From Pavona decussata (lineage: Eukaryota): a stretch of 64,000 nucleotides of DNA. A model generated the notes under the pieces. The model was given only the letters and a program-made list of their open reading frames with translations, made no database searches and had not been told where the DNA came from. Positions 1-30,828 of this stretch are shown piece after piece; position 1 is the first letter of the stretch; every line of letters begins with the position of its first letter. The DNA is taken from contig CDRNST010000086.1 in assembly GCA_977016875.1 (NCBI GenBank), positions 434,001 through 498,000 on the forward strand. The letters run 5' to 3'. The translations under genes and the position numbers were made by a program.

Positions 1-355
1 AATTTGCTTTCACGTTGGATAGGACAAAAAGACATTTTGCCGTCCTGTCTACTATGCAGTAGGCGGGCATATGGTTGTGAGGGGCTCAAAGAGAAGTGGG
101 ACATTCCATGCGGATTGAAAATGTTGGGGGTTAGCGAGAAAAAAGAAAATAGAAGGCTTGTAACTGTTAATAAGTGACACGTTAGCTTTACCATAAAGGT
201 TGAATGGAGATTAGCATCTCTCGGTTACTGTTGGATCTGTTGTCACGTGGGGTATTTGCTAGATAGCGAGATGTTTCAGAGTCTTATCCTTAATGCTTTT
301 TGTCATTACAAGGCTGATCAAACGAATTGATCTTATTTGGCCCATTTTACAGAGT
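1..355 (-). mobile_element. Part of a non-autonomous DNA element, inverted copy of 7987-8342; continues off the window start
   Basis: 1-355 is the reverse complement of 7987-8342 with only scattered mismatches. Confidence 0.8.
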
Positions 356-591
356 AACAGTCTGTTACGACTGACAAACCTGTGAGCCTCAGATTCCAGA
401 TCGAATTGGAATTTGGACGTGTTGGTTTTTAAGGAGAGGGGAAAACTGGGGAAGCCAGAGAAAAACCTCTCTGAGCAAGGATGAGAACCAACAACAAACT
501 CAACCCATGTATAACGCCAAGTCCAGGAATTGAACCCGCGCCACATTGGTGGGATGCGGGTGCTCTCATCACTACACTATCCCTGCTTCCC
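356..591 (-). mobile_element. tRNA-derived SINE, 3' end cut by the adjacent element
   Basis: Minus strand starts GGGAAGCAGGGATAGTGTAGTGATGAGAGCACC...GGGTTCAATTCC (A/B-box-like). Body is shared with 18934-19113 and 40475-40730. Confidence 0.75.
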
Positions 592-1284
592 TATCTTGTA
601 CAAATGCAACTCAGAACCTATCCTTGATACCTGTCTTTTATACAGTATAGTTCCAGAAAATATCCCCCCCCCCCCACCACCCCACCACAGAATGGATTGG
701 AAAGGACTAGTGGGGGGAGGAGGGGGCATCTCATACATGTAGGCCAAAGTTCAAAGAATTGTATGGAGCTTAATTGAAATTTCCAGAGGGGTAGGGGGTC
801 TTAGAAAAAATCTGTTCTATGGGGGTCGGGGTCTTAATATTTTTTCTTGGAAATGGAAATTCCAATGGGAAAGGTGGTTTCAAAATGATAACTTTGTAAT
901 GGAAATTATGAAGGACCGGAGTTCAAACCCATAAAGAACATAAATATTGTGGCTGGGGGCAGGTTGGTATGGGCATTAGGTGGAACAACATGCATTCTTA
1001 GTACATTATTACTTTTAGGAACTTGCTTGAGACTGCGTTGTCTTGTAGTGTGGCTTCCCTGTCTAACTTCATTGCATAAGGGCTAATAATTATACATGTA
1101 CCTGTTTATCAGCCTAATCACATGGACCAATTTACATGTTACAATTTGTTGGCCGAATTCTTTTTCTGTTGGTGAAGCGCAAGGTTAAAATCAGCATGAT
1201 TCAAAACATGTGTAGCACTGCCACAGATCAGGATACTTTTATGTAAATTGGCCTTAACACAGACTTTCTTTTTTATTTTTAAAG

Positions 1285-4200
1285 ATGATTGCTAAATATC
1301 TGGAAAATACTCATGCAGCGACTCACAATCGATATCATATGAAGTTACTTGATGTGTTTGCAGTGGATCATGAAAAGAAATCCTTCACTGATGTTGGAAA
1401 TAGGTATAACTAAGTAAATATGTAATGCAGTTGCGATTACAGATCTTCAGAAGCAGGACACAGCTACATATATAGAACAACTAATTATTATTAAAATAAG
1501 AGTGGTTATCAGTGGCTAAAAACTGACGTTACTGCCAGACTTGGGACCATAACCATGGATCTCAGTACTTGGCGATAAAAGCTATGATATGTTACAGAAA
1601 CGTCCAAGGTTTTCATAAATTTATTTGATTTTTTACAGCCTTCATTTTCTAAGTGACTAAGTAAGTAGTCTTTATTAAATGATTTCTTTCTTAATTACAT
1701 CCATTTTGAAATCACTGGTGATCCTTGGAATCTGATTGGTCCAAAATGGTGCAATTTATTCCTAAATTGCACCATTTTTTGCTCTAAATCGCATCCTTTC
1801 TCTAGCCCATCAAAATGGAAATGAAGTAACACAAATAGAATATTAATATTGACAATGATACTCTGTGATTTCAAAATGGATGTAATTAAGTGGTAATTGA
1901 ACTTCGTGTCGTGCAATTTTGGTCTGAAATCATACTTGTGATTTGAAATCAAACTCGCGCTGCGCGCTCGTTTGATTTTGAAATCACGCGTATGATTTCA
2001 GACCAAATTGCACTCCACTCAGTTCAATTACCAATATAAAACGTTCCCCCACTTCCCTCCCCTCCCCATTTTTTTTGTCTGGCTACAACAATATTGCATT
2101 TTAGAGAACATCATCTTGTTTGTTAGTTTTCTAACAGCCGGGACCATTAGTCTGCAATTTTTAAAAGTCATATTCTTTTATCCATTTATGTCTGAAAATA
2201 GATTAAGGAGGGAAAAATTAATTGTCTTTTTCTATTATGTACCCCTGGATATGCTGGTCCATTCCTCACTTAACACAAAACAATATGAAGGAAGAACGGT
2301 GCCGGAAACGAACGGACCAATAACAGAAGGAGAAAGAACTCTGTGAAGCCGTTCTGATGCGAGTATCTCAAGTTCTGTTGTGGAGATTGGTTCTCTAGTT
2401 GGTTGTAGCCTGCCTAGTCAGCAGTATTGTCCATGTGCAAATATAAAGGTTTGGCATTATGCCGCAAGAAAATACCATTTCAAATCCTGGCCATTTCCCC
2501 ATTCCCTTCACGGCTTTGCTGCTTGTTCGCCCATTTTTTGCCTTCGCCCAATATATCGCCAGCTGTGCAGGCTTGTTGGTTCCTTTTCCCAAACTCATCA
2601 GCTATATCCATTTACTTTGCAATGTTTTTCTCTTGTAGGATGCTTCTATGGCATGGATCCCGTTTAACAAACTGGGCTGGCATTTTAAGTCAGGGATTGA
2701 GGATACCTCCCCCAGAGGCCCCAGTGACAGGCTACATGGTAAGATCATGTTGAAGCAGTGTCATTGAGGATGACGGGTTAGGATGCAGTTTGTACAAACT
2801 GTACGTGATGGACGGTAGTAACTTTCTCAGATCTGTGCTTGCATGTGCTACTTGTCTGACCGGTACAACAGTCGTTGTCTTTTTGTGTACCTTAAATTTC
2901 AGGGCAAGATTGTTGTGACAGACGTTTATAATGTCCTGAAATTGTGTAAGCTTACACAAGACAAGTTTGGCTTGCCCTGGAAATTAAAATGTTTCTTAGG
3001 TAAATCTTTGCCATCAGAAATTTCAGAAGGAAATCTGCAGATGTCTTTGAGGGTTTAAGAAAATGATTTTTTTCTTTTAAAATTTGCTTAGAAGATCTTT
3101 GGAAACTGTTCGTGAACCGTAGGAACTGCCAACCAGGAACTGGATTACACGTAAAAATCAATGGAGAATATTAACTGGTTATAAAAGTTACTGCAACTGG
3201 TTTATGGTTAACTTTAATGTTTCTCCTTTATTTACTTGTAGTTTGGCAAAGGTGTCTATTTCGCTGACATGTCATCTAAGAGTGCAAATTATTGCTCTGC
3301 TACAAGGACAAAGAATGTTGGCTTACTGCTACTCAGCGAGGTCAGAAAAATGTAGCTTGAGCGCATTTTTTGAAATCTGTTGGCAAGGATTTTTTACCCC
3401 CGTGAGTTATTCGTCCATCACTTGAAGGGTCGCTCCTCAAAACAGGTAAAACTCGAAATCGTCCAAAAGCTGTGCACTTTGATCATTAAACGGCTTCTCC
3501 GAGTGATCTGTTTTGTGGAGAAGCAGAAAATGACTTTCACTTAGTCTCTCTCGGACGTTTCGAGGCGTTCTTTGCATTCTTTACATGGAAAGCAAAGTGA
3601 CTATTATTAAACCATGAAGTACATACAGCTGTGCATTCAAGTGTCGTTTGAAATGAGGGGAAAAGGCGTGCGAGCGACTTGGCTCTGCTTTGACTTGCTG
3701 TTCGCTGAGAAAGTGGCGCGAGTTTGGCTAATCTAGTCTAGAAAAACAAAACCAAAGCAGACAAAATTATTTTCAACTGAACTGAACACGGTTCTATTCC
3801 TTTGCAAAAAAATCACGGCATAGAAGAACAAACTTTGAGTGGAAGAAAATGTATAATATGAAAATTTTCTTTTTTTGCACGCACTATCCTATACGGCAGA
3901 TGACGGTATTTTTTTTTTCACACAGTGACACAGGCATACTCCGAGTTATTCTAACAGGAGTCGAAACTATGACTATCCTACAGATTACATGTTTGGTACC
4001 ATTCGTAGTCTTATCACTTGGCTCCAAAAATAAATTCCTGCACTCCGTTCATTGGCTGTGTTTATTTACAGGTTTCCCTCGGAAAGAGTAATGAGCTTCT
4101 AGAAGGGGATTACACTGCTGACAAGCTACCTACTGGCTGTCATAATGTTAAAGGCATGGGAAAAGTGGCTCCTGATCCGAACGACACTTGTACAATGTAT

Positions 4201-6565
4201 GTTGTGTTGGTCACCAGAGTATTGTTAGATCAGACTACCCGAAGTACTACTGCTTTCTCAGGGAACTCGAGCAAAAAATACGCCAAGTATCAGATCTTTC
4301 CTTAGAGGAGTGGGGGGGGGGGGAGGTAGGGGAGTGGCGGGGGGGGGGGGAAGCCTGGCTAACCAAGAATTCATTTAATTTATTATGGACACAAGCCGAC
4401 AGTATCACTGTCTTCAATTAAGTGGAATGTTCCGTTGATAAATAATGACAATATGCGTCGCTATCGTCTCCGAACTGACGCCCAATACTTGGTCTTTTCT
4501 CACCCACTGAGATCATGAACCATTCAGTTCAATTGAATTGAGCTTATTTGACTGTTTTTTTGAAGTGATCTGTGAGCTTTCGTGTGCCACAAGTTTGTCA
4601 ACTTACCTTAATAGTCACTACTCCAACGCCGCTTTACAAGTGGGTATCACGGCGTAAAATTGCGTGTCCTGTGATCGTTGTAAGAGTTACAATATTTCAT
4701 GTTTGATTTTTCAGGAAAGATGGGGTGGTTGTACCTTGTGGTAAAAGCAAAGAGACCGGTGTGGTCAATCCACGAGGATATACGCTCAAACATAACGGTA
4801 ATTTGTCTTATGCTTTGTTTGTTTACTTGAGTGAGACTTCACAACTGTAAACCTAGAAAAAGAATTAAATAGATAAAACATTAAAAGTGAACATCAAAAC
4901 TGTAAACCTTAAAAGGGAGACGCAAAAGGAAAGAGCCTCAATCAACCTACTCCAATTGTAAGGAGAAGCGGAAATTAAAACCGTAAAGCATTATTGCGTT
5001 CGACAGCAGATTGGAGTCGAGATGGTACGGGACAGCGTTGATTGCCGTGAATGAATGGATCTTGGGACGCGTATCTGAAATCCCCCGCAGATTTTTCAGG
5101 AGCTGATGACATCATCACCAACTTGGCAAAGGAGAGAGAGCCTGGTGAAATCGAACGCACTCCCTAATCTTTGATTATTCAGTACTAGTCTACATTAAGA
5201 CATGATAAAGGTAAGAACAAGGATAATGCGTTTTGGCCAGTGTCGTTGTGACAGCTGCAGTCATGGTAGATTGACCAGGTACAGGTCAAGGCAGGGTCTG
5301 AGAAGTGCTAGTTTGCAAAGGCGGTGACTAACAAACTGGATGAATAGAGCCGGTTTTAATTGAGTGTGTGTAATTGCGTTTTTACTTTGGCTCTGCATTA
5401 CTACGTTCTGTGATTGGTTGATAAAACTCGCGCCACTTTCTCAACCAATAAGATGTAAAACCAAAACCAATCGTGCCTCGCTCGCACGTGTTTTCCCGCG
5501 CCTGGCGCCGGTTACATGTATATTTACTTTGAATTCTGATTGGTTCATTGTGCTGTTTACATCTGTTGTGATTGGTCAGAGTAATTACTTTGGTTTTGGT
5601 TTTGGTTTTACGACACTCGATTGAAAACCGCTCTATACTGACATCGATATACATGATCACGGCGCATACCCAGTTCTATATAGTAAGGGGCTGCCGCCCA
5701 CTGCCTTTACGCATTTCTCCAGATTGCTGTTTAATAATAGCTTTGTTTTTATGAATTTTCGCAGTAATATGTGGGGTTTTTTTATAGTGAAAAATCTGAG
5801 GTCTTGGTTTAACATATTTTTGGTTCTTTGGTTTTGCAGAATACATAGTCTACAACACAAATCAGGTAATCAATTGCTCTGCACTGATTAGTGGAACAAA
5901 AGAAGTTGAGCACAAAATAACAAAAAAAAAAAAACCCGTTTTTTTTTCTATATACACTGAAATAAAATATTGCATAATGAAAAAAATTGTACGCCCGGAG
6001 TGCTTAAAACTGCGTACAAAACAGTCAGAGGTTTCGGGGATAAACCCCCTCATTAATGTTTATGTTTAGCTGTTTTTGGCACCCAGGGACTTGTTAGTGA
6101 ATTTGAGTAACGCCTTCAAAAATGTCACTTCAAAAAGTAAATTCACGTAGCCTAGTTATCCAGGCTGAATTGGTGAATATTGAATTCACCGACCTGTTCT
6201 CATCTTATCAATAAAACTTTAAATTTGGTCTCTTTGCGTTGTTGTTTTGAACAACGGCAAGGCAAGTGACCAAAATTTGCACCGCATGGGTGGATTTCAA
6301 TCACTCTTGGTCAAAGTATTACCTTTAAGAAGATCTAGTTGAACAGCTCGTGACTGCCTGTAGAGCAGGTTAATTAAGACCTGCGATTTTGTGCTTCTAA
6401 GCAAGCACAACTTCGAATGATTCACTGTTAGAAGTCTTGTGTTGTTGTCTTTATATCTGTGGGCCTTTTTTTTTCTTACTTAAAGATTTGGTTAAATTTA
6501 TTTGTTTTCATTTTCCCTAGGTGCGAATGCGGTACTTGGTGAAAGTCAAGTTTAACTTTAAATAA
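1285..6565 (+). CDS. PARP2: PARP2-like paralog, catalytic (ART) half only; 5' exons not in window
   Basis: Exons 1285-1403, 2639-2738, 3242-3340, 4072-4196, 4715-4797, 5840-5865, 6521-6565, all GT-AG and in phase. Encodes [51 protein letters not shown]...[33 protein letters not shown] triad intact, no stops. Confidence 0.9.
1694..2035. repeat. Fold-back interspersed repeat, present in PARP copy 1 intron only
   Basis: ATTACATCCATTTTGAAATCAC...GTGATTTCAAAATGGATGTAAT and GGTCTGAAATCATAC...GTATGATTTCAGACC inverted arms; absent from the paralogous intron near 23150-23200. Confidence 0.6.
2406..2573. mobile_element. Short TAGCC...GGCT element (shared with copy 2 near 23497-23666)
   Basis: Termini TAGCCTG / CAGGCT; GTTGGTT repeated on both flanks. 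Confidence 0.45.
4974..5180. repeat. Interspersed repeat, second copy at about 41480-41700
   Basis: Shared ATGGATCTTGGGA...CCCCGCAGATT...AACTTGGCAAAGGAG...ATCGAACGCACTCCCTAATCTTTGATTATT. Confidence 0.65.
5345..5635. mobile_element. MITE with TAGAGC...GCTCTA terminal inverted repeats
   Basis: TAGAGCCGGTTTTAATTGAGTGT / ACACTCGATTGAAAACCGCTCTA; degraded relatives near 3660-3800 and 24780-24915. Confidence 0.7.
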
Positions 6566-6892
6566 GTCCGTTATACTCTATCGGGCGGAAGTGATGTGTA
6601 AAGCCAAGGAATTTTTTAAACGGTCCAGCAGATAGTTACATGTAAAGATCCAGAAGAAAATGTACAAAAAGACAGCGGACGATTTTGACAAGGAGCCTTG
6701 TCAAAGACCGCCAAATATGGTGATAACTGACATAGTAACTTTATTTAGTTGGAAATATCGCAGAGACGGTATTAATGCCAGGTTGTATCGTGAGGTTTTA
6801 TATCTGTTGTGTGTACAGTTGCGTTCATGTTTTAAAAAATAGGAAAAACATCCCACTTCGTTTCGCACCCCCACCCACTTTGTCGTGCACCA

Positions 6893-7446
6893 AGGGTGGT
6901 CGCTTACGAGAGGTGGTCGCTTACGGGAAAGATCAATAAAATAAGCCTAATGCTGGACTGATAAATTAATTACCTAAAAATCTTACCCTAGCAGCTGCAA
7001 TTAGGTAAATAGAAACTAATTTATTTGATTTTTTCACATTTATTTATTCTTCTGACGAAACTTTGTTTAACATTTTGGAACAGATCACACTAACAATTTT
7101 CATTTACCTACAGATCTAATTATAGTAATCTTCTCTGTCTGTAAACTGCCAGTTGTCCGACGTAGCGTCATTAAAAATTGAACTTTTGTTGCTTCTGAGT
7201 AATTATTTACTCAGATCATACGCGAATATGTTGGGTGGTCGCTTACTGGAAACAGAAAACAAAAGAAGATGTTAAATTTCTGGCCTAAAAAGTGGTCGCG
7301 GTCCCTTAGAAATTTGAGTGGTGGTCGCTTACGAGAGAGCTCTTGAAACAGTATTTAACTTAGAAACAAAACGGTTGTTTACGAAGTGGTCGCTTACGGG
7401 AGGTGGTCGCTTACGAGAAGTGGTCGCCTTGAGAGAGTTGACTGTC
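6893..7446. mobile_element. Truncated Tc1/mariner-type non-autonomous element (GGTGGTCGCTTACG repeat family)
   Basis: Multiple GGTGGTCGCTTACG(A/G)GA subterminal repeats; right end GAGTTGACTG; related to 9509-10337. Confidence 0.65.
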
Positions 7447-7723
7447 TGCTTAAATAGCTTTGATTTGAATGCGCCGACTTTCTTGCCCAAAATCGAAATT
7501 TGGAGCCTGCTGGAACAGCGTAATAAACTAGTGTAATGAAGCATTAGCTTTTCGTGACTGATTTGAATGGGCGCGCTGTACGATTTCATCCACAGACGGA
7601 TAATCCCCGCATATTTAGCGTGCGTTCGATTCACCCTATTACGGAAAAGGAATACGTACAATGACGACAGGAAATCCCTCATAAGAGGATTTTGGTTGGA
7701 GTTACTAGAGTACAAAATCGCTC

Positions 7724-7870
7724 NNNNNNNNNNNNNNNNNNNNNNNNNNNNNNNNNNNNNNNNNNNNNNNNNNNNNNNNNNNNNNNNNNNNNNNNNNNNN
7801 NNNNNNNNNNNNNNNNNNNNNNNNNNNNNNNNNNNNNNNNNNNNNNNNNNNNNNNNNNNNNNNNNNNNNN
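7724..7870. other. Assembly gap (N run)
   Basis: Run of n. Confidence 1.
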
Positions 7871-8472
7871 AGCTCCAGCGAGACCTCTATACAACAGTTT
7901 TTTGGCTCAATAAAGAAAAAAGATATTGCTTTAGTCCACATTCAGTTTTGCTTATTAAATAAGAGCGCTCCGTTGCCTTTTCTTTAACTCTGTAAAATGG
8001 GCGAAATAAGATCAATTCGTTTGATCAGCCTTGTAATGACAAAAAGCATTAAGGATAAGACTCTAAAACATCTCGCTATCTAGCAAATACCCCACGTGAC
8101 AACAGATCCAACAGTAACCTAGAGATGCTAATCTCCATTCAAACTTTATGGTAAAGCTAACGTGTCACTTATTAACAGTAACAAGCCTTCTATTTCCTTT
8201 TTTCTCGCTAACCCTCCAAAATTTTCAATCCGCATGGAATGTCCCACTTCTCTTTGAGCCCCTCACAACCATATGCCCGCCTACTGCATAGTAGACAGGA
8301 CGGCAAAATGTCTTTCTGTCCTATCCAACGTGAAAGCAAATTCCAAGCGCACACGTTGCCCATTTTTGGAAATGCCGAAATGGCTGTTTTTATCCTTGAG
8401 GACGCATTATTCGTATGGACGAGCTATTTTTCCGTTGTGCGTCGTTCGAGACGAACAACGGAAGATAGTTCG

Positions 8473-10761: not shown

Positions 10762-13700
10762 ATGTCTCAGACGCAAAATAGACGGCGAAAAGCACCACGT
10801 GAGTACCTAATGTAAAATTAATTTTCACTTTATGCAGTAAATGATTTTGATTTGTGTAGTCGTTTCGGAGTTTTATTTCACCGATTCCCGAACACATGGA
10901 GGCTCTACATCAGAAAGGTACAAACATAAGCTTAAGCATGCTTAAGGTTATTCGACAGTTACTAGTGAGGAAAGCATTATGGTATTTCGGTAGGAGCGTA
11001 ACTGATAATAACAGTCTAAAAGATCTTACATTCACGGCTAAATTAGTTGCGATAATGTTTTGTGACTTTTTGGCAGCTTTCAGATAATGCACTAGTCAAT
11101 TGAAACCCCCACCGCCCCGGGCCCGGGACAGGTAGGGGGATTTGACAAAGGCCCTGATCAAATCATACCAAAACCTCCAGCCCCTGGGGAAAATCTTGAG
11201 ATCAAATCCCCCTCCCCCTGGGAACAAATTGGCAAGGGATTAAAAAAAAAATCCTGAACCAAACAAACAAAACGAAAAGAAATCGTTCACACTGAATTAA
11301 TCAGGAGCAAAATATATTTTGATACTGGGCAATAGTTCTCTTTTAATAACGAAATATGTCGGTGCCATGGGTCTACGGGGCCTCGGTTTGGTCTAAAAAG
11401 TAAAGGGTGGGGGCGTTCCCGGGGCCAAACAAAACTTGTTGTGGATTATTAAATTTTGCAAGAATATGAATTTCACATTACAACAGAGCATTTCTGAACA
11501 GTGGTAGCTTTGAAAATGTTAAACATCACATTTCAGTACAAAGCCGCTTTCGACTTGGTGCATCCACAAGTCCCATGCATTCGAAATGGAACCACTCTAT
11601 AGGGCAGCCAGGATTATCACAAGCAATCATATTGGGTACAAGAGTAACAGGCCTGCACGGCTCCCTAGCGCGTGTTTAAGCCTTTTTTATAATTTGGCTA
11701 TTACGGGTATATCTTTGACTGACCGCCCTCTCAGTGTAACATATGAGGGGAAGGTCTTTGTAGACTTCTTTGAACAATGGTTGTTGCTCTATTAAATGCC
11801 AGGCTTTCATGAGGATTTGTTTTAAGTTTGGCACTGCTGGGTGTGTTTTGTAACGAAAGGCAAGATTCATTTGTTCTCCTTTGGTTTTTGAAGGAGTGCT
11901 CAGTAGTTTCCTGTTTTCAAATTGCACTTCTGAGAGGGTCCTTTGAACAAGGTTCTCGCCTGTAGGCGTGATTTAGGATTTTGAATTTACTCTTCAAATA
12001 AATATTATGTTTTAAGAAGAGTTTGTTCTGAGAAGGCTCAGTGCTTCGCCTTTGATGAAGCGTTTTTTAACCGCTGGTGGGTGGCACGAAGAGGAGTGCG
12101 TATATTGACATGTTTCAGTAGGTTTGAAGTGCGTATGCACATCAAGAACTGAATAATTTGCTTTTGAATCTTTCACCTTTATAAATGTTTGTATCCAGAA
12201 ATGTTTCTGTTTCTGAAATTTCAGCCGTAAATTTAATTGTGGGGTGGTGTTTATTGGCTTGCTCAATGAACTGCTTTATCTCCTCTCCTTAAAGTCCAGA
12301 GGGAAAATATGTCGTCCATATATCGTTTCCAAATGAGCGGTTTTAAAATCTCCATTTCAACCTTAGCTATGAGATATTGGCAAAGGCGACTGCCGTTTTT
12401 GTACCCATGGCTGCACCATGGGTTTGTAGGGAGAGTTTTCCATAGAGCTGGAAATTATGAATTTTCTTCTTTCTTCAGTTTGAATTGTCTTTAAACCAAA
12501 TTTTGCAAAGCATTTTGCCAATAATCAGCCAATATGGATGGCGCGAAAGTGACAACGTGCAATTGTTTGACTTCGCAACGGACCTCGGTACCAGTCAACC
12601 ACAGTCAAATCTCCCTGATTCCCCGAGGTGGGGACATATAAAGAAGCAAAACACATCTTATCTACCATCCCCAGGGGACAGATCTCTGATCAAAAGTGCT
12701 TATATGCCCCTATTATCCCCCTATCTGTCCCGGGTCCGGGGGGGGGGGGGGGTGGGGGTTTCAATTGACTAGTGCATAAGCTTATTGTGTATCATATCTA
12801 GAAAACTCTCTGTGATGTGGGATTTTTTAAGTAAATAGGTGATAAGCTTAAATCAAGGGACTCAAATTCAATGAAAAATGGCTTCAGATGTTGGAGAAAG
12901 AAAGGAAACAAAGCCTTGTATTAAAGTGGCATTCAATCTGCGATCCTTCTTACCTCTGGGGTCCCTCGCAGACGCTCTTTTGGCTCATCACGCAATCTTT
13001 CCTCTCCAATGGTGAAATGGTTAGGAAAAAAAAAACCATGACATTCAAATTTAACAGTTTCTTTGAATATATTTTACACACTCAAATAATTTTCAGGTCG
13101 TTGAAGGTTGCCTTTATTCACACCAGTTGTGTATTTCCATGTTCATTACTGCAGTAGAGAATTTGTTTGTGATACAAGAGAATCAAAAATATTTTTCTTT
13201 CCAAATGCCTTGAGCAAAGGTTCACCAGTGTATCTGTGTGTGGAACTAATGTTGCTATGTATATCAAAATGACAGAAGTCTTATTCTGGTAAATATAGCA
13301 TATTAACCCAGGATTCAGCAGTGGATCCTTCTGTCTTGGTTAGATGTGGAGTGAAAATAATTTAAATCTAACAAGAGAATTAAAAGATTGATGTGGACAA
13401 TTTTTAGCAAGTTCTGATGGCCAAGATTCTTCAAAAACAGTTCAAGCAAAAAAGGCAAAAGTTGATACGAATGGAACTGTGAATGGTACAGCAGCGACAT
13501 CAAGCTCTCGTTCAACACTAACATGGGAAATAGAAGCAGCTAAATCTACATGGACAAAGTATTCTGACAATCTTGTGGAGATAATTTCAGAAGCCTTCAA
13601 AAGTGGGAAGACAGATGTTGATATCTTGGATGGAAAAGCAGAACTAACTGTGATATTTGAGCGCATGGTGCAAAGGAATAAGAAAAGTGGATGGGAGAAA

Positions 13701-16700
13701 AGAATAAGATGTGTTTCAACAGCTGGAGACTCAGACCCAGATGAATGTAAGCATCAAATCCATACAGTACTAAAGTGTGACATCATAAATATTTGAATTT
13801 TTGAAATTATGGGATTTATTAAGATGTTCATAAAGAGCATGATGAAAAATGACTACTTGCCAAAAATCAGTATCTTATTACAATTTGGGAGTGAGATGTT
13901 GGAACTTTTATGCTCCATTGACTCCATGCAAATACTTCTAATTTTGTTTCTGTTCTGTACATTTAGAACAGAGACAAAATTATGAGGATTTGTATAGGGT
14001 CGGTGGAGCATAACAATACTATTATTGCACCCCCAAATTGCAATAGGATGCTGATTTTTGGCAAGTAGGCATTTTTCATCATGCTCTTTTAAAATATCTC
14101 AACAAATGCTATAATTTTGGAAATTTAGTTTTTGTGATGTCGTCACTTTAGTACTCTATGTATCACACATCAGTTATTAGCAAGTAAACAAAGATACATA
14201 TGTGTACTCTAGGGACTGTTGCAAATGTTTGCACAAAAGCCCTTTTCGAAACCAATAACAGCCCAATTAAAAACAGGAAAGATATACAAAGGATTAATCC
14301 AACCCAGGATTAATTCATCTGGATCTCTAAAATTTCAGTTTTATAGCTTATAAAATGAAGGTTTCTGTAGATTATTTTGGCTTACATTTTGACACGAGAG
14401 CCATCTTTCAGACTGGAACTAAAACAGTAGTATAAAGTGCGTTATGACAAAAGAAACAAAATGCTTTTTTAATATTCAATTTTCTGGATTAGAGTTTATA
14501 AGCACTAATTTAAATTAGAACAACTGGACCAAGGTTAGTTAATAGAAAAAGTGCAAGATTGGACACTGCAGGGCTTAAGAAAGTTATCTTCCAAATTCAA
14601 GATCAATAATGTGATGTGTGACAGAAGATGTCAACTAAAATGCTTATATATATAGCATGCATGACATATATTTTATTCGATGGTTTTACATATAATACGC
14701 GGGGATATTTTGCGAGTTGCGTTGTATTTTCGGGGCTCGGAAAAATACGAGCAATGAGCAAAATGTCCGCGAGTATTACATGTAAAACCATCGAATAAGA
14801 GATTTATTATTCCACTACAAAAAAATTTTGTTATTTTGGCTTCTCTGTTTTGGTAACAGTTTTGAAATACACTCGGCATTAACTGTCCATCGGTATATGG
14901 CGCGTACGAATGATGTAAACAATGCAGAAAGCCAGTTAAATGTCTTTAATTTGATTTGATAAAATGAAAAGATAAATGACAAGTGATTGGCATGCTAAAA
15001 ACTTGTTTTTGAGCTTGCATCGTTTCAAAAACTATTCTTCGTCGAGTCCGGCCATTGTTGCTCCTTTTTTCTGCCTTTTCCTTCCATATTCACTCTGTTG
15101 TAAACCGGTCAAACCGGGACACAACAGTGTATTATGGTCTCATATTTTGCGCGTTCTCTTGACCTTATTTGGTGAAATGACATAATAGTGGAATAATAAA
15201 GTCACATATTATATCTTTTGGTGCTTTACAGACCACTTCTGTTGATGAGGTTGAAAAGTAAGCTTGTCATATGCTGTAAATGACAATTCAAAAAAGTTTT
15301 TGAGGTAGCATGGTCAAGTGGTTAGGGTGCCAGACTTGAAATCTGGAGGTCCCGGGTTCAAGTCCAGCTCTGACAACTAGCTGGAGTTGTTTCTTGGTAG
15401 CCCCAAGTTCAACTCCTCGGCCGTGCTTGTAAATAGCCAGCTGGTCTGCCTCCTGCCAGTTGGGATTCTTAACCTTGTTATTTTCAATTTAAATTAAATT
15501 GTGTTTGGAAGTTTAATACTTGGCCACAATAGCAATTGTGCTATAAACACTGCTGAGGGTAAATAAAGGTTATTTATTTATTTATTTATTTATTTTAACT
15601 TCATCATTCCAAGTGTCATTTTGCTCGTCATTTAGATACCTGGGAATGGGAAGATGCAAAGGGTAACTGGACAGAATATTCCAAACCCACTGTCTACCTT
15701 TTAGAAGCTGCTTCCATGTTTGGTTTAACCAGTGTCAGGTTGAAAGAGGACAAAAAAGATCTTATTGTGGATTTCACAAAGAAAATTCAAACAACTAAAA
15801 CTGGGAGAGGATCTAAGAATGTTCATAGGATCAAAGCTAGTGATGCTGGTAGGTGAATATATTCAAGACATTTGTGTTTAGTTTGTATTGAAGGTGATCT
15901 CAAGTGAATATATTCAAGACATTTGTGTTTAGTTTGTATTGAAGGTGATCTCAAGTAAATAATAATGAATGATGTTGTTAGGCTGCATCAGTGAGAAGCT
16001 TTTGTGAGTGGTGAAGTACAACTGTTTGGATCACTTTAAACTTTACTTTTAAGGGGATCATGGGTAATCAGGGCAAACATGGCAGGAAGTACAGAAATTT
16101 GTACAGGAATGGTAACTTAAAACATCTTCATCATACATCTGTTGTGCAGTTCCAGAAAAAATCCATACCCACCCCATGGAAGGTCATCAGAAATTCCTAG
16201 GGGGAGGGGGGTCTTAAAAGTCAAAAGTTTAGAAGCAGAGTATAAGGCTTAACTGGAATTTTCTGGGGGGAAAGGAGGATGCAAAACAAAAAGCCTTCAG
16301 TGGGGGGAGTATGAATGTTTTCTGGAACTGCACATTTAATGAAAAATTATACTACTTTTGACATGTAAGACAGATGTGCAAAGATAATGTGAGAATCTGT
16401 TTTACAAGATTCTCTAACAAGCATGAAGTGGTCTACTGTCTGTCATTCTTAATTATATTACATCTATTTATTATTTATGTAATTTTTTGTTTTGATGTAT
16501 CATGGTACACAGCTCTAGTCATCCAACAGATTAAAATGCCCTGTTTGTCGCAACTGTTATGACATATGTACACTTATAGGGAAAAAAATTAACACTCTGT
16601 GATTATATGTATGCCTTTCCTCTTTCAGGTGCTTCAAAAGTATCGTCATCTCCTAAAGCTGTTAAAACAGACACGAGTGTAAAGAAAGAAAACAAGAAAG

Positions 16701-18831
16701 TGAAAAAAGTAGAGGCTGATACTAAAGTGAAAGCTGAAAAAGGTTAACTAAATTTGTTTTGGCATTATCCTGTTGAGTCTGCACCTTGATTTCTGCAGGT
16801 TAGAGTAAGCTACATGCAGAGTATGAAACTAGTGAGGCATTGAGAATAATATGAGATTAGCCCCGTCAGCCATTGACCAGGAACTATTGTTGTTAATGGG
16901 ATGACAGCTCAGACAACTGTTTAGTATTTTCGTGATTAGAATTATGTTTTTTTTTCCCAGATGAAGTGAAATCAGTCGTGTTCAGTGGTAAGGCCCCAGT
17001 CGACAGTCACTGTACCATTAAAGACAGCACTCATGTGTTTACAGAGGGTGAATGCATCTGGGATGTGATGCTTAACCAGGTAATTACCTCCTTCTTGTGA
17101 TATGCTGACATGGTACATGTAGATTAGAAGGGAAAGTTGTTGGCAAAATGTTGGTGTATAACCCATTTCTCCTTGCCCACAATACCTCGATGGGATGACC
17201 ACTTTGTAGTGTTGGGATGGCTTATGTGTCTCTGTGACCCTTACACCTATGCTGGAGGGAATTTCAGCTCTGGGCCACCCATGCTGAACAAGTCAAAGTG
17301 TAGAGGCTAGACAAAGAGTGGTCCTCTGGTCCTCCAGATTGGGGGTTGAACGTATGGCTAGCAACCTTATCCAGGGGGTTTATAAGGCCCAGGCAACCGG
17401 GCAAATTGAAGAACATATCCAAGCTAACTATCCTTTCCTGGTGTACTAACCTCTGCCCACTTCTTCAAAATCTTAATGAAACCCCTGCTTAATAAATTTA
17501 GTATGCTACAGAAACCAAAACCAGTATAGTTGAAAGGGTGTGTACTGGTAGATGCCCTTTACTCTCCTGAAATTGCTAAGGATTGATGATGATGATGAAG
17601 ATGATAATGATGATGACAGAGTGACAAGAAGTTATTGAAAGTAAAGGCCAGGAGAAATAAACCATTTTGACCCCTTTGCCATTATGTATAATTCTCTAGG
17701 CCATAACTAAAGGTGACTGGTGAGAGAAAAAAATCAGAACTGTAAAATGGAGTTAATATAAAGAAATAAAATATTTATGGACCATTGGTGATCATATTAT
17801 TAATCTCTTTGCTTATTGGCAATCACCCAGCAAGAAGACTAATGATTTGTAAACTCCAAGATGCTTCATTCTTCAGAACTAATTTAATCTCTTGCTGTAC
17901 GTATGATGTATGGTCCAAGTTAAACAGTACTGTAATCTATATTTTGCCATTATTTCTTTTTGAAAAAATTCCACCCCTGGTTTTATAGCTCAATAGTTTA
18001 AATTCTTGAAGTATACAGCATGTTTCACGCATTGCATATAATTTCCTTGCAGACGAATGTAATGAACAATAATAACAAATACTACCTGATTCAACTGCTG
18101 GAAGACAACCGAGCCAAGAAGTATTATGTCTGGCAAAGATGGGGACGAGGTAATTATTTCGAAAAAGATTATTTCGTTCGTTAATTCTTGTTTACTTTGT
18201 GGCGTATTGTACAGTTCCAGCAAAACTCCATATCCACCCTATGGAAGGTCATTGGAAATTCCTAGGGGGAGAGGGGTCTTAAAAGTATGAAGCTAAACTG
18301 GAATTTCCTGACTGGATGGGTGGTGTAAAACAAAAAACCTTCCATGGGGGGAGTATGGATATTTTCTGGCCTTAGACATTTATTCTTTTATTTAAATTAA
18401 TTACTGCCGTGTCATATACTTTATGCTTGTATTGCTGTTTAATTGTGAGTAGCCTGCGAGAGCAGACGCATTTTCCGACTTTTGTTTTACCTGCCGTGGT
18501 TGAAAGAAATGTTGGAAAAGGCGTCTGCTCTCACAGGCTAAATTGTGAGCTAATTTTGCAAAAAAATTTGTCTTTCAGTTGGGTTCAGTGGACAAAACAA
18601 TTTAGTTACTTGTGGTGCAGACCTTGAAGAGGCTAAAAAAGTCTTTACAAAAAAGTAAGTTTGGTTACTTTGTGAAACGTGCACAAGTATGCATAGCTTG
18701 ATGCAAATGTAACAAAAACAATACACAGTTCAATATCATTCAGCAAATACTGCTCAGCAACTGTACATATAATCCTCATGGCCGACTCACAGTAATATAC
18801 ATGTGCAATGTAGCTCATAAATATAATAGTA

Positions 18832-18910
<79 letters not shown>

Positions 18911-21900
18911 GATAATAGTAATAATAATAAATCAACTTTGTTTAACGAGGGTGACACTTAATAATTTGTTACGACTGACAAACCTGTAACACTCAGATTC
19001 TGTATCGAAATTTGAATTTGGACGTGTTTGATTTTTAGGAGAGGGGAAAACCGGAGTACCTGGGGAAAACCTCTTGGAGCAAGGACGAGAAGCAACAATA
19101 AACCCAACCCACATTTGCTCCTGGAATGTCAGTCCCCTTCAAAACTATCTTACACAATTGCAGCCCATCTCTGCTGTCATTTTTAAAAGTTCTAGGTCTC
19201 CCTAAACATTACCACATTAAAAATTCACGTAGCATGCCCATGTGAAAATGGAAATGTTATAATATGAATTACATTCCTCTCATCAACTTAAAATGGCTTT
19301 CTTAGATTCTCAGACAAGACAAAGAACGACTGGCAAGATAGGGATAGTTTTGTAAAAGTTCCAGGAAAGTACGACCTACTCATCATGGACTACAATGCGG
19401 AACAAGAGGAGAAAGACACTGTTGATGCACCTGTCAAAGAAGAAAAACCTGTTTTGGAAAGCAAACTGGACCAGAGAATCCAAACCTTAATAGAATTGAT
19501 CTGTAATGTACAGGCTATGGAAGAAATGCTGAAAGAGATGAAGTATGACACAAAGAAAGCACCTCTAGGTTAGTTTTTTTTTTGTTCCTTCCTTAATTAA
19601 TTAGACTGTTTGTCTTAAAGGGAGGGGTTCACTAAATGCTTTTTTCTCTTTCTTATCAACTTTATGGACTTAATAATCCCACTCACCTGTACTTCAGTAA
19701 TCACATTCTATAATTAGTCCAAGCAAAATGACTGATGACCAAAATTCACAGAAAATGCTAGTGGATTGTACTCATATTGTCGATATTGAATTTAGTATTG
19801 ACCCATAGGATTTATTCCATGGTTGATGTGTTTTCAGTTATTTGCATGTGAAATAACGCAATCATTTGAAAAATTACCACCCAACTTACCTATTACCTAT
19901 ACCTTCCGAATTAAATTAAACAGGCTTGGGTCATAGTGAGCAAAGGCGAAAAAGTATTTTGTTTATGGACATGCACAGAACCGTGAACCCCTCCCTTTAA
20001 ATGCCATACAATTTGCAAGCAAGTAATAATTAATGTTGTCCCTTTTCTCTCTTCCAGAAATCCTATACTAATACCCTGCTGTTCCTTTTTTCAAATTCAC
20101 GTCAAGTACCGTATTTATATGATTAACTGCCCACCTAGGCTCGATTTCCAGCCGCTGTTCGTACTGCCCACCCTGAAAGCTCAAAAAGTTAATAAGCGCC
20201 CACCCCACCACCTCCCAAGAAAAAACATTTCTGTACCAGCCTAGAGTGTAGTAAGAGGAGCGTCAGTTGCATTCCAAAATTGGTTTTAGATACGGTAGTC
20301 AATGAAATTTTATTTTTTTTATACTTGTTCATCTAGCTTTTGCATTTTTTTTTTTGTTGCAGTGAAATAAACTTGTTATCCCTTGTTTTGTTATTCTCTA
20401 AAAATGTCCTTATAATACTTTGTTGCTAAGTGCAGTTGGCACTCAAGAATCTGTAACAAAATCTATGTCAATAATATAATTTGTTATTTTAAGGAAAGCT
20501 TACCACTGACCAAATCAAGGCTGGCTATGAAGCCCTAAAGAAAATTGATACCTGCATCAGAAACAGCGACTTTGGTTCAAAGCTGGTAAGGGCCTGCGAC
20601 GAGTTCTACACAAGGATTCCTCACTGTTTTGGGTAGGTGTTTCCATGTAGATTACCAAATTGTGATGTATTGTACTTGATAATACTCTCTTTTAGAAAAT
20701 ATTTGACGTGAATCTTGTTGCTTTCTTTAAGAATGAAGAGACCACCTCTCATAAGAACAACAGAGGAAGTGAAGATCAAACTGGACTTGCTGGAGGTATA
20801 AACATTATTCCAAAATGGATGCCATTTTAAATAATATTCTTTTGTTTGCACTCAAATTAGCCCTTCTTGCCTCGTTCAAGATAAAATATTCTTTTGATTT
20901 TTGAGTTTAAGAATATTAAAATGGTAGCCATTTTAGAATAACGTGCAGGTACAATGCTTGGTTATGTGTATGTTTGGTTGATGATTTTCTATACTTTGCG
21001 AAATGTTCAGAAGACCATTTTATTAACAGCTAAACCAAATGGAAAACTACGAAGAGAATACTAAAACAAACAAGACTGCTACCTAAGAAAAATTTGAAGG
21101 AGTCCACAAGGCCACAAACCAAGAACGTGAGAGCACACTAACTCGAACTCCCAAGGGAGACCAAAAATAGTTAGTGAGTTAGCAGGGGGTAAGCGAGGAT
21201 TCAAGTTAAAAAAAATATTTTCCCAATCATGAGTCACTGGTGCAGTAAGTTTGTTTATAAGAGCCTTTTGATAAGAATGTTTAATTTGGGAATTTTAGAC
21301 AATACTTTTAGAACATGTTAAGGAAAAAACAAGGTTGAGGTCATCGTTTCCATACGTAACACACGTAATCAGTAAAGATTGAAGATTTGAACACTCCAAT
21401 TGGCCATGTTGTGACATTTTTAGATTTATTGACCAGCATCCTTGAAATAGAGTTATTGGGGTAGATTTGAGCCAAGGGAAAGTAAAATTAGTTCAAGTTA
21501 GCAGGGGTTCGAGTTAACTGAGTTCAATTAGCTGATACTTTTTAATAGTAAATGACTGAAAAATGGGTTCAAATCCCGGGGAAATCGGATTTTGTTTGAG
21601 GTAGATGCAGTTCAAGTTAGCAGGGAGTTTGAGTTAGTGGGGTGCTACTGTGATAATCTATACAGTCTGGTTTCTGCTTAAATTGCTGGCACTGTTTCTT
21701 TTCACAAGAACTCTTGCCCACATGTAATAAGTTTGGAAAATAAGTGGTACGATGCATGACTAACTGATGGTTTCTTCGTGCAGGCTTTAGGAGATATTCA
21801 GATTGCTGTTAAAGCCATGCAGGAAGAAGCGGAGTCTCTTGAACATCCAGTTGACAAGCATTACAGAACACTTCATTGTGATCTTATGCCCCTCGATCAT

Positions 21901-29687: not shown

Positions 29688-30828
29688 GTCCACCATACGC
29701 TATCGGGCAGAAGTGACACATAAAGCCAAGGAATTTTTAAACAGTACAGCAGATAGTTACATGTAATAATCCAGAAGAAATTGTACAAAAAGACAGTGGA
29801 CGATTTTGACAAGGAGCCTTGACAAAGACCGCCAAATATGGCCATAACTGATTTAGTAACTTTATTATATAGTTCTGTTGGAAATATCGCAGAGATGGTG
29901 TTGATGCCAGGTTATGTCTGTATCGCGTGCAGTTGCGTTCGTGTTAAAAAAGAAACAAAAAAGGAAAAAAAATTCTTTTTCGTTTGCTACTGAAGAGTAT
30001 GCTGGACGGTGCCTACTAAAACTGAAGTGTTTATGCGCGGTTTATGACTATGCGGAGAAAGCAGATCTTAGCAAGGGCTATTGGAATCCAAAAAGAAAAG
30101 TGGGGGTAACCACGCATTTTTTTAGAGATAATTAAGCAACAGTTATTCTAAAAAGCCGTAAAATACAAAGCAATGTATGGCGGTTTTTTTTTGCAAATTT
30201 AAGCTTTATCTCTGAAAAATACATGGTTACCCCCAATTTTCTCGCCCAAAATCGAAATTTGGAGCCTCCTGAAACAGCATAGTAAACTAGTGTAATGAAG
30301 CATTAGCTTTTCGTGACTGATTTGAACGGGGGCGCTGTACGATTTCGTCCACAGACGGATTTCAAGTATATGAAACAGTTCTCGTATATTTAGGTTGCGC
30401 TCGATTGACCCTATTCCGGAATAGGAATACATACAATGATGACAACAAATCCATCACAAGACGTTTTTTTACTGGAGAACAAAATGGCTCTTGAATTATC
30501 ATGTGTCAGCGAAAATTTGCCGACATGTCTTCCCAAATTTACTTAAAAAGAGAAATCTAACAGCTATTCCGGTTGTTCTTGTTCCGGAGGACGCGACTAC
30601 CCACTTTTAAAAGCAATAAAAAACATCTTTTGGTTTGCGAACTTCCTTGTCTTGTTTATTGCATTTTGCGACACTGTTATCTTAAAAACAGGAAAAGTGC
30701 GCCTACAATGTCTACTTATTGTATTTAATTACCAGCATGAGATTAAACTTGAAACAGATGTTGAATTAACTCCCTGTCCTTGTTAAGCCAGAACGCCCTC
30801 TGTTCGACTTCCTTGTTTTCATGTTAAG

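What the first reader, a model, noticed from the sequence alone, without database searches (positions are those of the whole stretch)
4788..4797. PARP2 duplicate naturally carries the equivalent of the PARP1 Y986H hyper-branching mutation
Seen: copy 2 reads AAC TAT AAC G|AA (N-Y-N-E, as in vertebrate PARP2 TLNYNEYIVY), whereas copy 1 reads AAA CAT AAC G|AA (K-H-N-E) through an adjacent two-base change. Established: the Tyr two residues before the catalytic Glu is PARP1 Y986 in the acceptor site, and engineered Y986H makes shorter, highly branched PAR. Inference: this animal may encode a paralog specialised for branched PAR beside a canonical one, giving a natural two-enzyme PAR-architecture system.
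Basis: partly seen in the sequence, partly recalled or inferred. Interest (0 to 1): 0.78.

Follow-up and report, generated by a model that had tools for sequence, protein, structure and literature searches.

The report
Catalytic-only coral PARP2 duplicate with Tyr-to-His
A stony coral carries, just upstream of its normal PARP2 gene, an intact but fast-evolving copy of only the catalytic-domain exons, in which the tyrosine two residues before the catalytic glutamate is really a histidine (the change that makes engineered human PARP1 build highly branched polymer); whether the copy is expressed and active is not shown.

Summary
Window 4788-4797 reads AAA CAT AAC G (K-H-N-E) and the second copy at 26546-26555 reads AAC TAT AAC G (N-Y-N-E). 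The His aligns with the Tyr of GYTLNYN in solved PARP2 chains, which is PARP1 Y986. A related species' contig carries the same A and C.

Copy 1 is not a full paralogue. Homology to the full WWE-WWE-WGR-HD-ART gene (copy 2, about 13392-29687) begins at 599, inside an intron, so copy 1 holds only the last seven exons. These give 198 codons starting at an ATG and cover the whole ART domain. It sits between 360-nt inverted repeats.

- **For a kept reading frame:** there is no stop or indel (3.9-8.4 indels expected from intron rates), all splice sites are canonical, and the H-Y-E triad is intact.
- **For relaxed constraint:** its branch carries 13 non-synonymous and 5 synonymous changes, against 2 and 5 for copy 2. 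The replacements fall at random with respect to conservation, and Y-to-H is one of three hits on near-invariant sites.
- **Expression:** only hinted, by one copy-1-type contig over exon A in an RNA run.

Tyr is present in 280 of 289 related enzymes and His in 2. Hyperbranching remains an untested analogy. The scan has not noted this before on other DNA.

The parts
1..360 (.). Left arm of an inverted repeat. It reaches the window start, so it may be longer.
   Evidence: 1-360 is the reverse complement of 7982-8342 at 95-98% identity.
363..593 (.). Dispersed repeat, lying just before the point where homology to copy 2 begins.
   Evidence: similar to 18967-19111 (+) and 40660-40473 (-).
599..7693 (+). 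Duplicated segment (copy 1), homologous to 22131-30468.
   Evidence: colinear blocks at 78-96% identity; intron distance about 0.126.
1285..1403 (+). Copy 1 exon A. It is the first ART exon, begins with ATG, and carries the His equivalent to PARP1 H826.
   Evidence: Pfam PARP profile positions 6-36.
2639..2738 (+). Copy 1 exon B. Holds the LLWHGSR His of the triad and the D-loop with the derived A-to-P change.
3242..3340 (+). Copy 1 exon C. Holds the triad Tyr and the SKSANY motif.
4072..4196 (+). Copy 1 exon D. Carries the derived E, G and N replacements.
4715..4797 (+). Copy 1 exon E, ending K-H-N plus the first base of the catalytic Glu codon.
4788..4793 (+). Codons AAA CAT (Lys173-His174 of the 198-codon frame). 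These are the L985 and Y986 equivalents of PARP1.
   Evidence: Kept in organism B.
5840..5865 (+). Copy 1 exon F. It completes the Glu codon, then Y-I-V-Y-N-T-N-Q.
6521..6565 (+). Copy 1 exon G with the TAA stop. Its acceptor is TAG, against CAG in copy 2.
7724..7870 (.). Run of N between the end of the duplicated segment and the right inverted-repeat arm. Left untouched.
7982..8342 (.). Right arm of the inverted repeat.
13392..21942 (+). Copy 2 (parent gene) N-terminal part: two WWE exons, a Lys-rich linker, and the WGR and helical-domain exons. Exact splice sites were not all fixed.
   Evidence: Pfam WWE twice, PARP_reg.
22824..29687 (+). Copy 2 ART exons: 22824-22942, 23732-23831, 24370-24468, 25637-25761, 26473-26555, 28796-28821 and 29643-29687.
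26546..26551 (+). Copy 2 codons AAC TAT (Asn-Tyr), the canonical state.
   Evidence: All coral orthologues read TLNYNEY.

Best explanation
Copy 1 is a lineage-specific partial duplicate of the coral PARP2 gene. It contains only the seven exons of the ADP-ribosyltransferase (ART) domain and sits about 5.7 kb upstream of the parent, between 360-nt inverted repeats. Its 198-codon frame starts at an ATG that coincides with the first duplicated exon and covers the whole ART fold with an intact H-Y-E triad. I think it is most likely still a coding sequence, kept by weak selection and evolving fast. It would give a stand-alone catalytic domain without the autoinhibitory helical domain or the DNA- and PAR-sensing domains, and so would be DNA-independent if active. 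Its acceptor site has been remodelled (Asn-Tyr to Lys-His, plus Gln-to-Arg two residues after the H826-equivalent His and Ala-to-Pro in the D-loop). By analogy with PARP1 Y986H it would favour short, branched polymer. Shown here: the sequence, the domain content, the intact frame, the rate asymmetry and the conservation of His in a second species. Inferred: transcription from its own start, enzymatic activity and the branching phenotype.
For: - **Frame and splice sites:** seven exons, all with AG/GT boundaries, 597 nt, no stop and no indel relative to copy 2.
- **Domain coverage:** exons A-D match Pfam PARP profile positions 6-150, and exon E aligns to solved PARP2 chains.
- **Indels:** introns of the two copies show 0.013-0.028 indel events per aligned nt. 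That predicts 3.9-8.4 events in 594 nt on the copy-1 lineage; none are seen (P about 0.02 to 0.0002).
- **Non-synonymous changes:** 13 on the copy-1 branch, against about 25-29 expected at the dS or intron rate (P 0.007 to 0.0006).
- **Age and origin:** the copies are sister (support 100/99) with dS 0.107, against at least 0.63 to any other coral.
- **Second species:** organism B keeps A and C at 4790/4791 and the copy-1 letters at 4716/4717.
- **RNA hint:** in RNA run X15, coverage is exon-only, and 8.8 of 26.2 depth over exon A carries all five copy-1 letters. The copy-2 contig breaks exactly 30 nt after the last difference, as expected if a second path joins there.
- **Literature:** Y986H gives 15-16-fold branching (PMC7544232, PMC6486540). 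L985, Y986 and H826 line the acceptor site (PMC10711553). HD-less PARP1 has DNA-independent activity, and HD-less PARP2 was crystallised with HPF1 (PMC8150716; PDB rows 5dsy/6tx3).
Against: - **No upstream gene parts in view:** no promoter, 5' end or upstream exon is visible. Homology stops in an intron at 599.
- **Relaxed rate:** omega on the copy-1 branch is about 0.6, against about 0.1 for copy 2 and 0.02-0.09 among coral orthologues. From the N:S ratio alone it cannot be told from 1.
- **Random placement of replacements:** they fall at random with respect to conservation. Three of 12 hit sites that are at least 90% conserved (A63P, S131N, Y174H), whereas differences between orthologues avoid such sites.
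- **RNA over other exons:** in X15 the contigs over exons B, D and E show only copy-2 letters.
- **Protein collection:** no ART-only coral protein with K-H-N-E was found, though this species seems absent from that collection.
- **Flanking repeats:** an inverted-repeat-flanked gene fragment is the typical look of a captured, non-functional piece.
- **Transfer of the phenotype:** the branching effect of Tyr-to-His was measured in PARP1, not in a PARP2-type or HD-less enzyme.
Confidence: 0.45

Rival explanations
1. Copy 1 is a non-functional relic: a gene fragment duplicated or captured without promoter and N-terminal exons. It is drifting under relaxed constraint and has not yet been hit by a disabling mutation. 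Tyr-to-His is then one neutral replacement among 13.
For: - It is a partial duplicate starting in an intron and flanked by inverted repeats.
- There is a 5-fold branch-length asymmetry, with 13 N to 5 S on its branch.
- The N:S ratio is not different from neutral (binomial P 0.22).
- Replacements are placed at random with respect to conservation, including three near-invariant sites.
- Three further non-synonymous changes (E20K, V53A, S131N) arose in this species after the split from organism B.
- Only copy-2 letters appear in RNA contigs over exons B, D and E.
Against: - No indel in 594 nt, where 3.9-8.4 are expected.
- All 13 splice sites are canonical and there is no stop.
- There are half as many non-synonymous changes as the neutral rate predicts.
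- The copy is kept, with intact exons D and E, in a second species.
- A copy-1-type contig over exon A occurs in an RNA run that has no intron coverage.
Confidence: 0.35
2. The seven exons are the 3' part of a longer gene whose 5' exons lie upstream of the window. That gene could be a full second PARP2 with an enlarged, repeat-filled intron, or a chimeric gene with an unrelated N-terminus. In that case the first reader's 'second enzyme' would be closer to the truth.
For: - Exon A keeps a canonical acceptor.
- The window begins only 1284 nt upstream of exon A, and its first 360 nt are a repeat arm that may continue leftwards.
- A sponge has an annotated short PARP2-like protein with an unrelated N-terminal stretch of about 55 residues in front of the same ART start (P0163).
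Against: - The last helical-domain exon of copy 2 lies about 200 nt before the homology boundary, and nothing like it is found in 1-598.
- No full-length coral protein with K-H-N-E is among the 120 best full-length hits or in the five coral clusters.
- A rough depth calculation on X15 suggests the copy-1 contig runs about 34 nt upstream of the acceptor rather than being spliced there. This is a weak inference.
Confidence: 0.15
3. It is an assembly or sequencing artefact: a mis-placed haplotype, or wrong bases at 4790/4791.
For: - A run of N follows the segment (7724-7870) and inverted repeats flank it.
- The second sample of the species did not yield a copy-1 contig over exon E.
Against: - The copies differ by about 12% in introns, with many indels, which is far beyond allelic divergence.
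- A second sample of the species matches copy-1 introns exactly and also holds copy-2-type contigs.
- A second species has the same two bases.
Confidence: 0.03

Closest known systems
Engineered human PARP1 Y986H (Rolli et al. 1997; Aberle et al. 2020, PMC7544232)
   Same: His replaces the Tyr two residues before the catalytic Glu, in the acceptor site. The H-Y-E triad is kept.
   Different: - The PARP1 variant is a laboratory mutant of full-length PARP1; here the His is a natural substitution in a PARP2-type ART.
- Here the helical domain, WGR and WWE are absent.
- A neighbouring Asn-to-Lys and 11 other replacements accompany the His.
- No product has been measured.
PARP2 catalytic fragment without the helical domain (CAT deltaHD; PDB 5dsy and 6tx3, seen)
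   Same: Essentially the same boundaries: the ART fold alone. Such fragments fold, and PARP1 deltaHD shows raised DNA-independent activity (PMC8150716).
   Different: Those are constructs. Here the truncation results from a partial gene duplication, and translation from the exon-A ATG is inferred, not shown.
Full-length coral PARP2 (copy 2 of this window; Acropora, Montipora, Pocillopora and Stylophora 'poly [ADP-ribose] polymerase 2-like')
   Same: The ART sequence is 93% identical to copy 2 and 82-89% identical to other corals'. Exon structure is the same.
   Different: Those proteins are 697-756 residues with WWE, WGR, PARP_reg and PARP domains, and all read TLNYNEY. Copy 1 has only the last 198 codons and reads TLKHNEY.
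Short PARP2-like proteins with the same Tyr replaced in other lineages: sponge Corticium candelabrum (P0163, P0168: Cys) and Raphanus sativus (P0255: His)
   Same: These are PARP2-type ARTs with the acceptor Tyr replaced. The two sponge proteins carry only the Pfam PARP domain and lack WGR and the helical domain.
   Different: - They are independent events in distant lineages.
- The sponge residue is Cys, not His.
- P0255 still carries part of the helical domain at its N-terminus.
- Their function and expression are equally unknown, and they were not examined further here.
PARP3-type enzymes
   Same: This position is not Tyr in PARP3-like proteins: Gln in P0128 and His in P0120. Natural ARTs of the PARP1-3 clade can therefore work without the Tyr.
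   Different: They are only 31-34% identical to the coral ART, and PARP3 is mainly a mono-ADP-ribosyl transferase (my own knowledge). Copy 1 is clearly PARP2-derived.

Membership tests
[quoted passage not shown] | Complete ART fold with the H-Y-E triad. | tested here: met
   Exons A-D match PF00644 profile positions 6-150 and exon E aligns to PARP2 chains. The 198-codon frame keeps LLWHGSR, G-V-Y-F-A-D, SKSANY and the Glu of H-N-E. The joined model itself was not sent to any search tool.
[quoted passage not shown] | Acceptor-site residues for elongation: the H826, M890, K903, L985 and Y986 equivalents (PMC10711553). | tested here: not met
   The H826, M890 and K903 equivalents are present. The L985 equivalent changed Asn to Lys and the Y986 equivalent changed Tyr to His. 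Tyr is present in 280 of 289 relatives.
Canonical DNA-damage PARP2 (WGR + helical domain + ART; in invertebrates also WWE) | Helical regulatory domain (PF02877) directly N-terminal to the ART. | tested here: not met
   Homology to copy 2 begins at 599, in the intron after the last helical-domain exon. No such exon lies in 1-1284. Sequence upstream of the window is unseen.
Canonical DNA-damage PARP2 (WGR + helical domain + ART; in invertebrates also WWE) | WGR DNA-break-sensing domain. | tested here: not met
   WGR exons are found only in copy 2, at about 16936-19570.
Canonical DNA-damage PARP2 (WGR + helical domain + ART; in invertebrates also WWE) | Purifying selection typical of the family (omega about 0.05). 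| tested here: not met
   The copy-1 branch has 13 N to 5 S, omega about 0.6. Copy 2 has about 0.1 and orthologues 0.02-0.09.
Hyperbranching PARP variant (as PARP1 Y986H) | His at position -2 from the catalytic Glu. | tested here: met
   CAT at 4791-4793.
Hyperbranching PARP variant (as PARP1 Y986H) | Raised branch-point to linear-unit ratio of the polymer made. | not testable with these tools
   This needs an enzyme assay (R2-Ado/R-Ado by LC-MS).
Unprocessed pseudogene / dead partial duplicate | Disabling mutations: frameshift, stop or lost splice site. | tested here: not met
   None in 597 nt and 13 splice sites. From intron rates, 3.9-8.4 indels are expected.
Unprocessed pseudogene / dead partial duplicate | Neutral pattern of replacement. 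| tested here: inconclusive
   Placement of replacements is random with respect to conservation, and the N:S ratio is not different from neutral. But the number of non-synonymous changes is about half the neutral expectation.
Unprocessed pseudogene / dead partial duplicate | No mature transcript. | tested here: inconclusive
   RNA run X15 has a copy-1-type contig over exon A (8.8 of 26.2 depth) without intron coverage, but only copy-2 letters over exons B, D and E. All data are contigs, which drop the rarer variant.

The most novel reading that the evidence does not exclude
Some stony corals keep and express a stand-alone PARP2 catalytic domain with no helical domain, and therefore constitutively active. 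Its acceptor site has naturally acquired the Y986H-type change together with added positive charge (Asn-to-Lys next to it, Gln-to-Arg beside the H826-equivalent His). It would make short, heavily branched poly(ADP-ribose) independently of DNA breaks, giving a natural second 'PAR architecture' enzyme next to a WWE-bearing canonical PARP2.
Probability: 0.15. Interest if true: 0.75.

Novelty: new variant of a known kind. Interest (0 to 1): 0.45.

Why it matters
Branching of poly(ADP-ribose) has so far been studied with artificial PARP1 mutants, and Y986H is reported as the only mutant that raises the branching ratio strongly (PMC6486540). A natural enzyme with that residue would be a ready-made tool, and it would be evidence that polymer architecture is something evolution tunes. 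An ART-only PARP without its autoinhibitory domain would also be an unusual regulatory solution. If the copy is instead a slowly dying fragment, the case is an ordinary example of relaxed constraint after partial duplication. It is also a warning against reading single famous residues in duplicates without first checking the gene's integrity and rate.

Tried and rejected
1. **Metagenome pattern scan.** I scanned metagenome contigs for the exon-E motif with four free bases. The 17 hits were all chance matches without PARP similarity. Two came from gut-metagenome assemblies. All were set aside and not studied further.

2. **Word-index search for ART-only coral proteins.** Queries were P0024:545-744 and P0316:532-729. 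No coral protein of 109-346 residues appeared among representatives. The two 198-residue cluster members found later (P0414, P0422) read N-Y-N-E and come from truncated mRNA contigs of other corals. This species' own PARP2 is not in the collection, so the absence says little.

3. **Genomic context in Montipora.** The look-up via P0408 found no record, so I could not test whether other corals have an upstream partial copy.

4. **Tree building.** A direct IQ-TREE call failed; treekit gave the tree.

5. **Share of 31-letter words in RNA runs as evidence of expression (0.07-0.11).** Rejected, because about a quarter of the stretch is high-copy repeat (depth bins 1570-2169 and 4970-5769).

6. **Gene conversion as the reason for the clean frame.** Considered unlikely, because exon dS (0.107) is close to the intron distance (0.126).

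7. **Joined spliced model.** The joined 198-residue model was used only inside scripts, for translation, alignment and counting. It was not sent to any search, look-up or folding tool, so no exact look-up of the product and no structure prediction of copy 1 were made.

8. **Runs of N.** The runs at 7724-7870 and 28326-28454 were left as they are.
Full report
**1. The observation**

The bases at 4788-4797 are AAACATAACG, followed by GTAATT. The exon begins after the AG at 4713-4714 and reads [27 protein letters not shown]. The next coding exon starts AA TAC ATA GTC, which completes a Glu codon. A 22-nt probe finds only one other place in the window, 26534-26555, with two adjacent mismatches that give AAC TAT (none expected by chance). 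Against the sequences of solved structures, the copy-1 exon aligns to PARP2 catalytic fragments, with its His opposite the Tyr of GYTLNYN. That Tyr is PARP1 Y986, two residues before E988.

**2. What the two copies are**

A self-comparison shows that 599-7693 is colinear with 22131-30468 at 78-96% identity.

- **Copy 2** is a complete gene. Stop-free stretches and comparison with full-length relatives place two WWE exons (13392-13793 and 15599-15853), a Lys-rich linker, and WGR, helical-domain and ART exons between about 13392 and 29687.
- **Copy 1** holds only the last seven exons: 1285-1403, 2639-2738, 3242-3340, 4072-4196, 4715-4797, 5840-5865 and 6521-6565.
  - All have AG/GT boundaries, and together they form 198 codons plus TAA, without stop or indel relative to copy 2.
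  - The first duplicated exon begins with ATG. Exons A-D cover Pfam PARP profile positions 6-150.
  - The frame is thus the whole ART domain and nothing else.
- **The 5' boundary.** The last helical-domain exon of copy 2 lies about 200 nt before the homology boundary. Copy 1 has instead a dispersed repeat (363-593) and then a 360-nt sequence whose inverted copy lies at 7982-8342, just beyond the other end of the segment and a run of N.
- **Mode of duplication.** This is not a simple tandem duplication. The layout resembles a fragment inserted or captured between inverted repeats. The left arm touches the window start, so its full length is unknown.
- **Host.** The nearest proteins found here are indeed coral PARP2s.

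**3. Is it real in other data?**

All four runs laid on 570-6569 were held as contigs.

- **X4**, a second sample of the same species, matches copy-1 introns exactly over several pieces of 339-602 nt and also holds copy-2-type contigs. Both copies therefore exist outside the assembly. Over exon E, however, only the copy-2-type contig was laid. Contigs keep one branch where two near-identical paths meet, so this is not evidence of absence.
- **X5**, a different species (organism B), has a 287-nt contig over 4589-4875 with six differences and no gap.
  - It keeps A and C at 4790/4791 and the copy-1 letters at 4716/4717, and it lacks copy 2's 13-nt intron deletion.
  - The Lys-His pair is therefore shared by at least two species.
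  - Organism B has the copy-2 (ancestral) letter at 1342, 2677 and 4145. E20K, V53A and S131N therefore arose in the window's species after the split.
- **X7**, a coral metatranscriptome that also covers introns, holds two contigs over 4686-4880. One has TCA...AAC TAT (Ser, Asn-Tyr) and one has ACA...AAA TAT (Thr, Lys-Tyr). A Lys-Tyr version thus exists in some coral, which suggests Asn-to-Lys and Tyr-to-His were separate steps. I cannot say which gene copy or species these contigs belong to.

**4. Expression**

X15, from the same species, covers exons and repeats but not the introns at 2170-2569 and 2770-3169, so it behaves as RNA.

- Over exon A, 17.4 of 26.2 depth carries copy-2 letters. 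This belongs to a 1048-nt contig whose other 953 nt lie elsewhere, the parent mRNA. The remaining 8.8 carries all five copy-1 letters.
- The parent contig ends exactly 30 nt after the last difference. In a 31-mer graph, that is where a second path would join.
- Over exons B, D and E only copy-2 letters are seen. This is what bubble removal would leave if copy 1 were the rarer transcript, but it is equally what absence would give.
- I count this as a hint, not as proof.

**5. How the copy evolves**

Six coral PARP2 mRNA contigs (L001, L003-L007) align without gaps over the 198 codons.

- **Tree and distances.** The two copies are sister with 100/99 support. Branch lengths are 0.045 (copy 1) and 0.008 (copy 2). 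Pairwise dS is 0.107 and dN is 0.033, while dS to any other coral is at least 0.63 and omega among orthologues is 0.02-0.09.
- **Branch counts.** Parsimony puts 13 non-synonymous and 5 synonymous changes on the copy-1 branch, and 2 and 5 on the copy-2 branch. Three synonymous changes are ambiguous. Omega is thus about 0.6 against about 0.1.
- **Against neutral decay:**
  - Introns differ by about 0.126 and carry 0.013-0.028 indel events per aligned nt. That predicts 3.9-8.4 indels in 594 nt on the copy-1 lineage, yet none is seen (P about 0.02 to 0.0002).
  - The 13 non-synonymous changes are about half of what the dS or intron rate predicts (P 0.007 to 0.0006).
  - All splice sites are intact and no stop is present.
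- **For relaxed constraint:**
  - The N:S ratio alone is not different from neutral (P 0.22).
  - The replaced positions are as conserved on average (0.56) as random positions (0.63).
  - Three of 12 fall on sites kept in at least 90% of 280 relatives (A63P in the D-loop, S131N, Y174H). Of the 65 differences between coral orthologues, only one hits such a site.
- **My reading.** The frame has been kept by selection for most of its history, but not under the rules that govern a canonical PARP2 catalytic domain.

**6. How unusual is His here?**

In 289 PARP1/2/3-type catalytic domains gathered by three searches, the position is Tyr in 280. The exceptions are:

- His in 2: a 248-residue Raphanus 'PARP2' and a PARP3-like protein.
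- Cys in 2: two short Corticium sponge proteins with only the PARP domain.
- Asn, Phe and Gln once each.
- Glu in two proteins that also lack the catalytic Glu.

All coral PARP2s from Acropora, Montipora, Pocillopora, Stylophora and unnamed transcriptomes read TLNYNEY. His is thus rare but not unique.

**7. What it could do**

From papers:
- Y986H gives a 15-16-fold higher branching ratio, shorter chains and good residual activity. It is explained by tighter binding of the acceptor pyrophosphate (PMC7544232; PMC6486540).
- The acceptor site is lined by H826, M890, K903, L985 and Y986 (PMC10711553).
- Removing the helical domain raises DNA-independent activity (PMC8150716).

In copy 1:
- The H826, M890 and K903 equivalents are kept.
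- The L985/Y986 pair has become Lys-His.
- Residue 16, two after the H826-equivalent His, has become Arg.
- Overall the copy has gained about four positive charges (Q16R, E20K, S149K, N173K, against A117E).

It is an inference, not a result, that this raises phosphate affinity at the acceptor site and shifts the product towards branched or short polymer. It is also an inference that an ART-only protein would act without DNA breaks.

**8. Verdict**

| Reading | Weight |
|---|---|
| Retained, fast-evolving, probably ART-only coding copy with an altered acceptor site | 0.45 |
| Not-yet-broken relic | 0.35 |
| 3' part of a longer gene that starts left of the window | 0.15 |
| Artefact | 0.03 |

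The 'two-enzyme PAR-architecture system' is not shown. The specific hyperbranching claim has perhaps a 15% chance overall. Interest is moderate: a rare natural variant at a mechanistically famous residue, in an unusual truncated paralogue, but with function unproven and a relaxed-constraint signature.

**9. Limits**

- The joined spliced model was never sent to a search, look-up or folding tool.
- The N runs were not touched.

Noticed in passing
window 1-360 and 7982-8342: Inverted-repeat arms of 360 nt (95-98% identical) enclose the whole copy-1 segment. The left arm touches the window start. This could be the ends of a large mobile element that captured the gene fragment, or a local inverted duplication.
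   Followed up: partly
window 13392-13793 and 15599-15853: The parent PARP2 has two WWE domains (Pfam E 1e-9 and 4e-10). The WWE + WGR + PARP_reg + PARP architecture is widespread: oysters, echinoderms, hemichordate, sponges, lungfish, coelacanth and sturgeon all show PF02825.
   Followed up: partly
proteins P0163 and P0168 (Corticium candelabrum, same 8.5-Mb contig): Two short sponge 'PARP2-like' proteins (280 and 210 residues) carry only the PARP domain and have Cys in place of the same acceptor-site Tyr. P0163 has an unrelated N-terminal stretch of about 55 residues. This is an independent parallel to the coral copy.
   Followed up: no
run X7 contigs over window 4686-4880: A coral metatranscriptome holds a version with ACA ... 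AAA TAT (Thr, Lys-Tyr), intermediate between copy 2 (Ser, Asn-Tyr) and copy 1 (Lys, Lys-His). It shares the derived C at 4757 with this species, while organism B has the ancestral T there. That does not fit a simple tree and may reflect conversion between the copies or incomplete lineage sorting.
   Followed up: no
window 1570-2169 and 4970-5769: Two introns of copy 1 contain very high-copy repeats: contig depth is in the thousands to hundreds of thousands in all four runs, against tens for flanking DNA. These inflate word-share figures for any coral run.
   Followed up: no
copy 1 codons 16, 20, 149, 173, 174 (window 1330-1332, 1342-1344, 4716-4718, 4788-4793): Five of the 13 replacements add positive charge or a His (Q-to-R, E-to-K, S-to-K, N-to-K, Y-to-H), against one that adds negative charge (A-to-E). 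The net shift is about +4 for a domain that binds a polyanion.
   Followed up: no
window 6518-6520 versus 29640-29642: The acceptor of the last exon is TAG in copy 1 and CAG in copy 2. It is still a usable acceptor, and it is the only change found next to a copy-1 splice junction.
   Followed up: no
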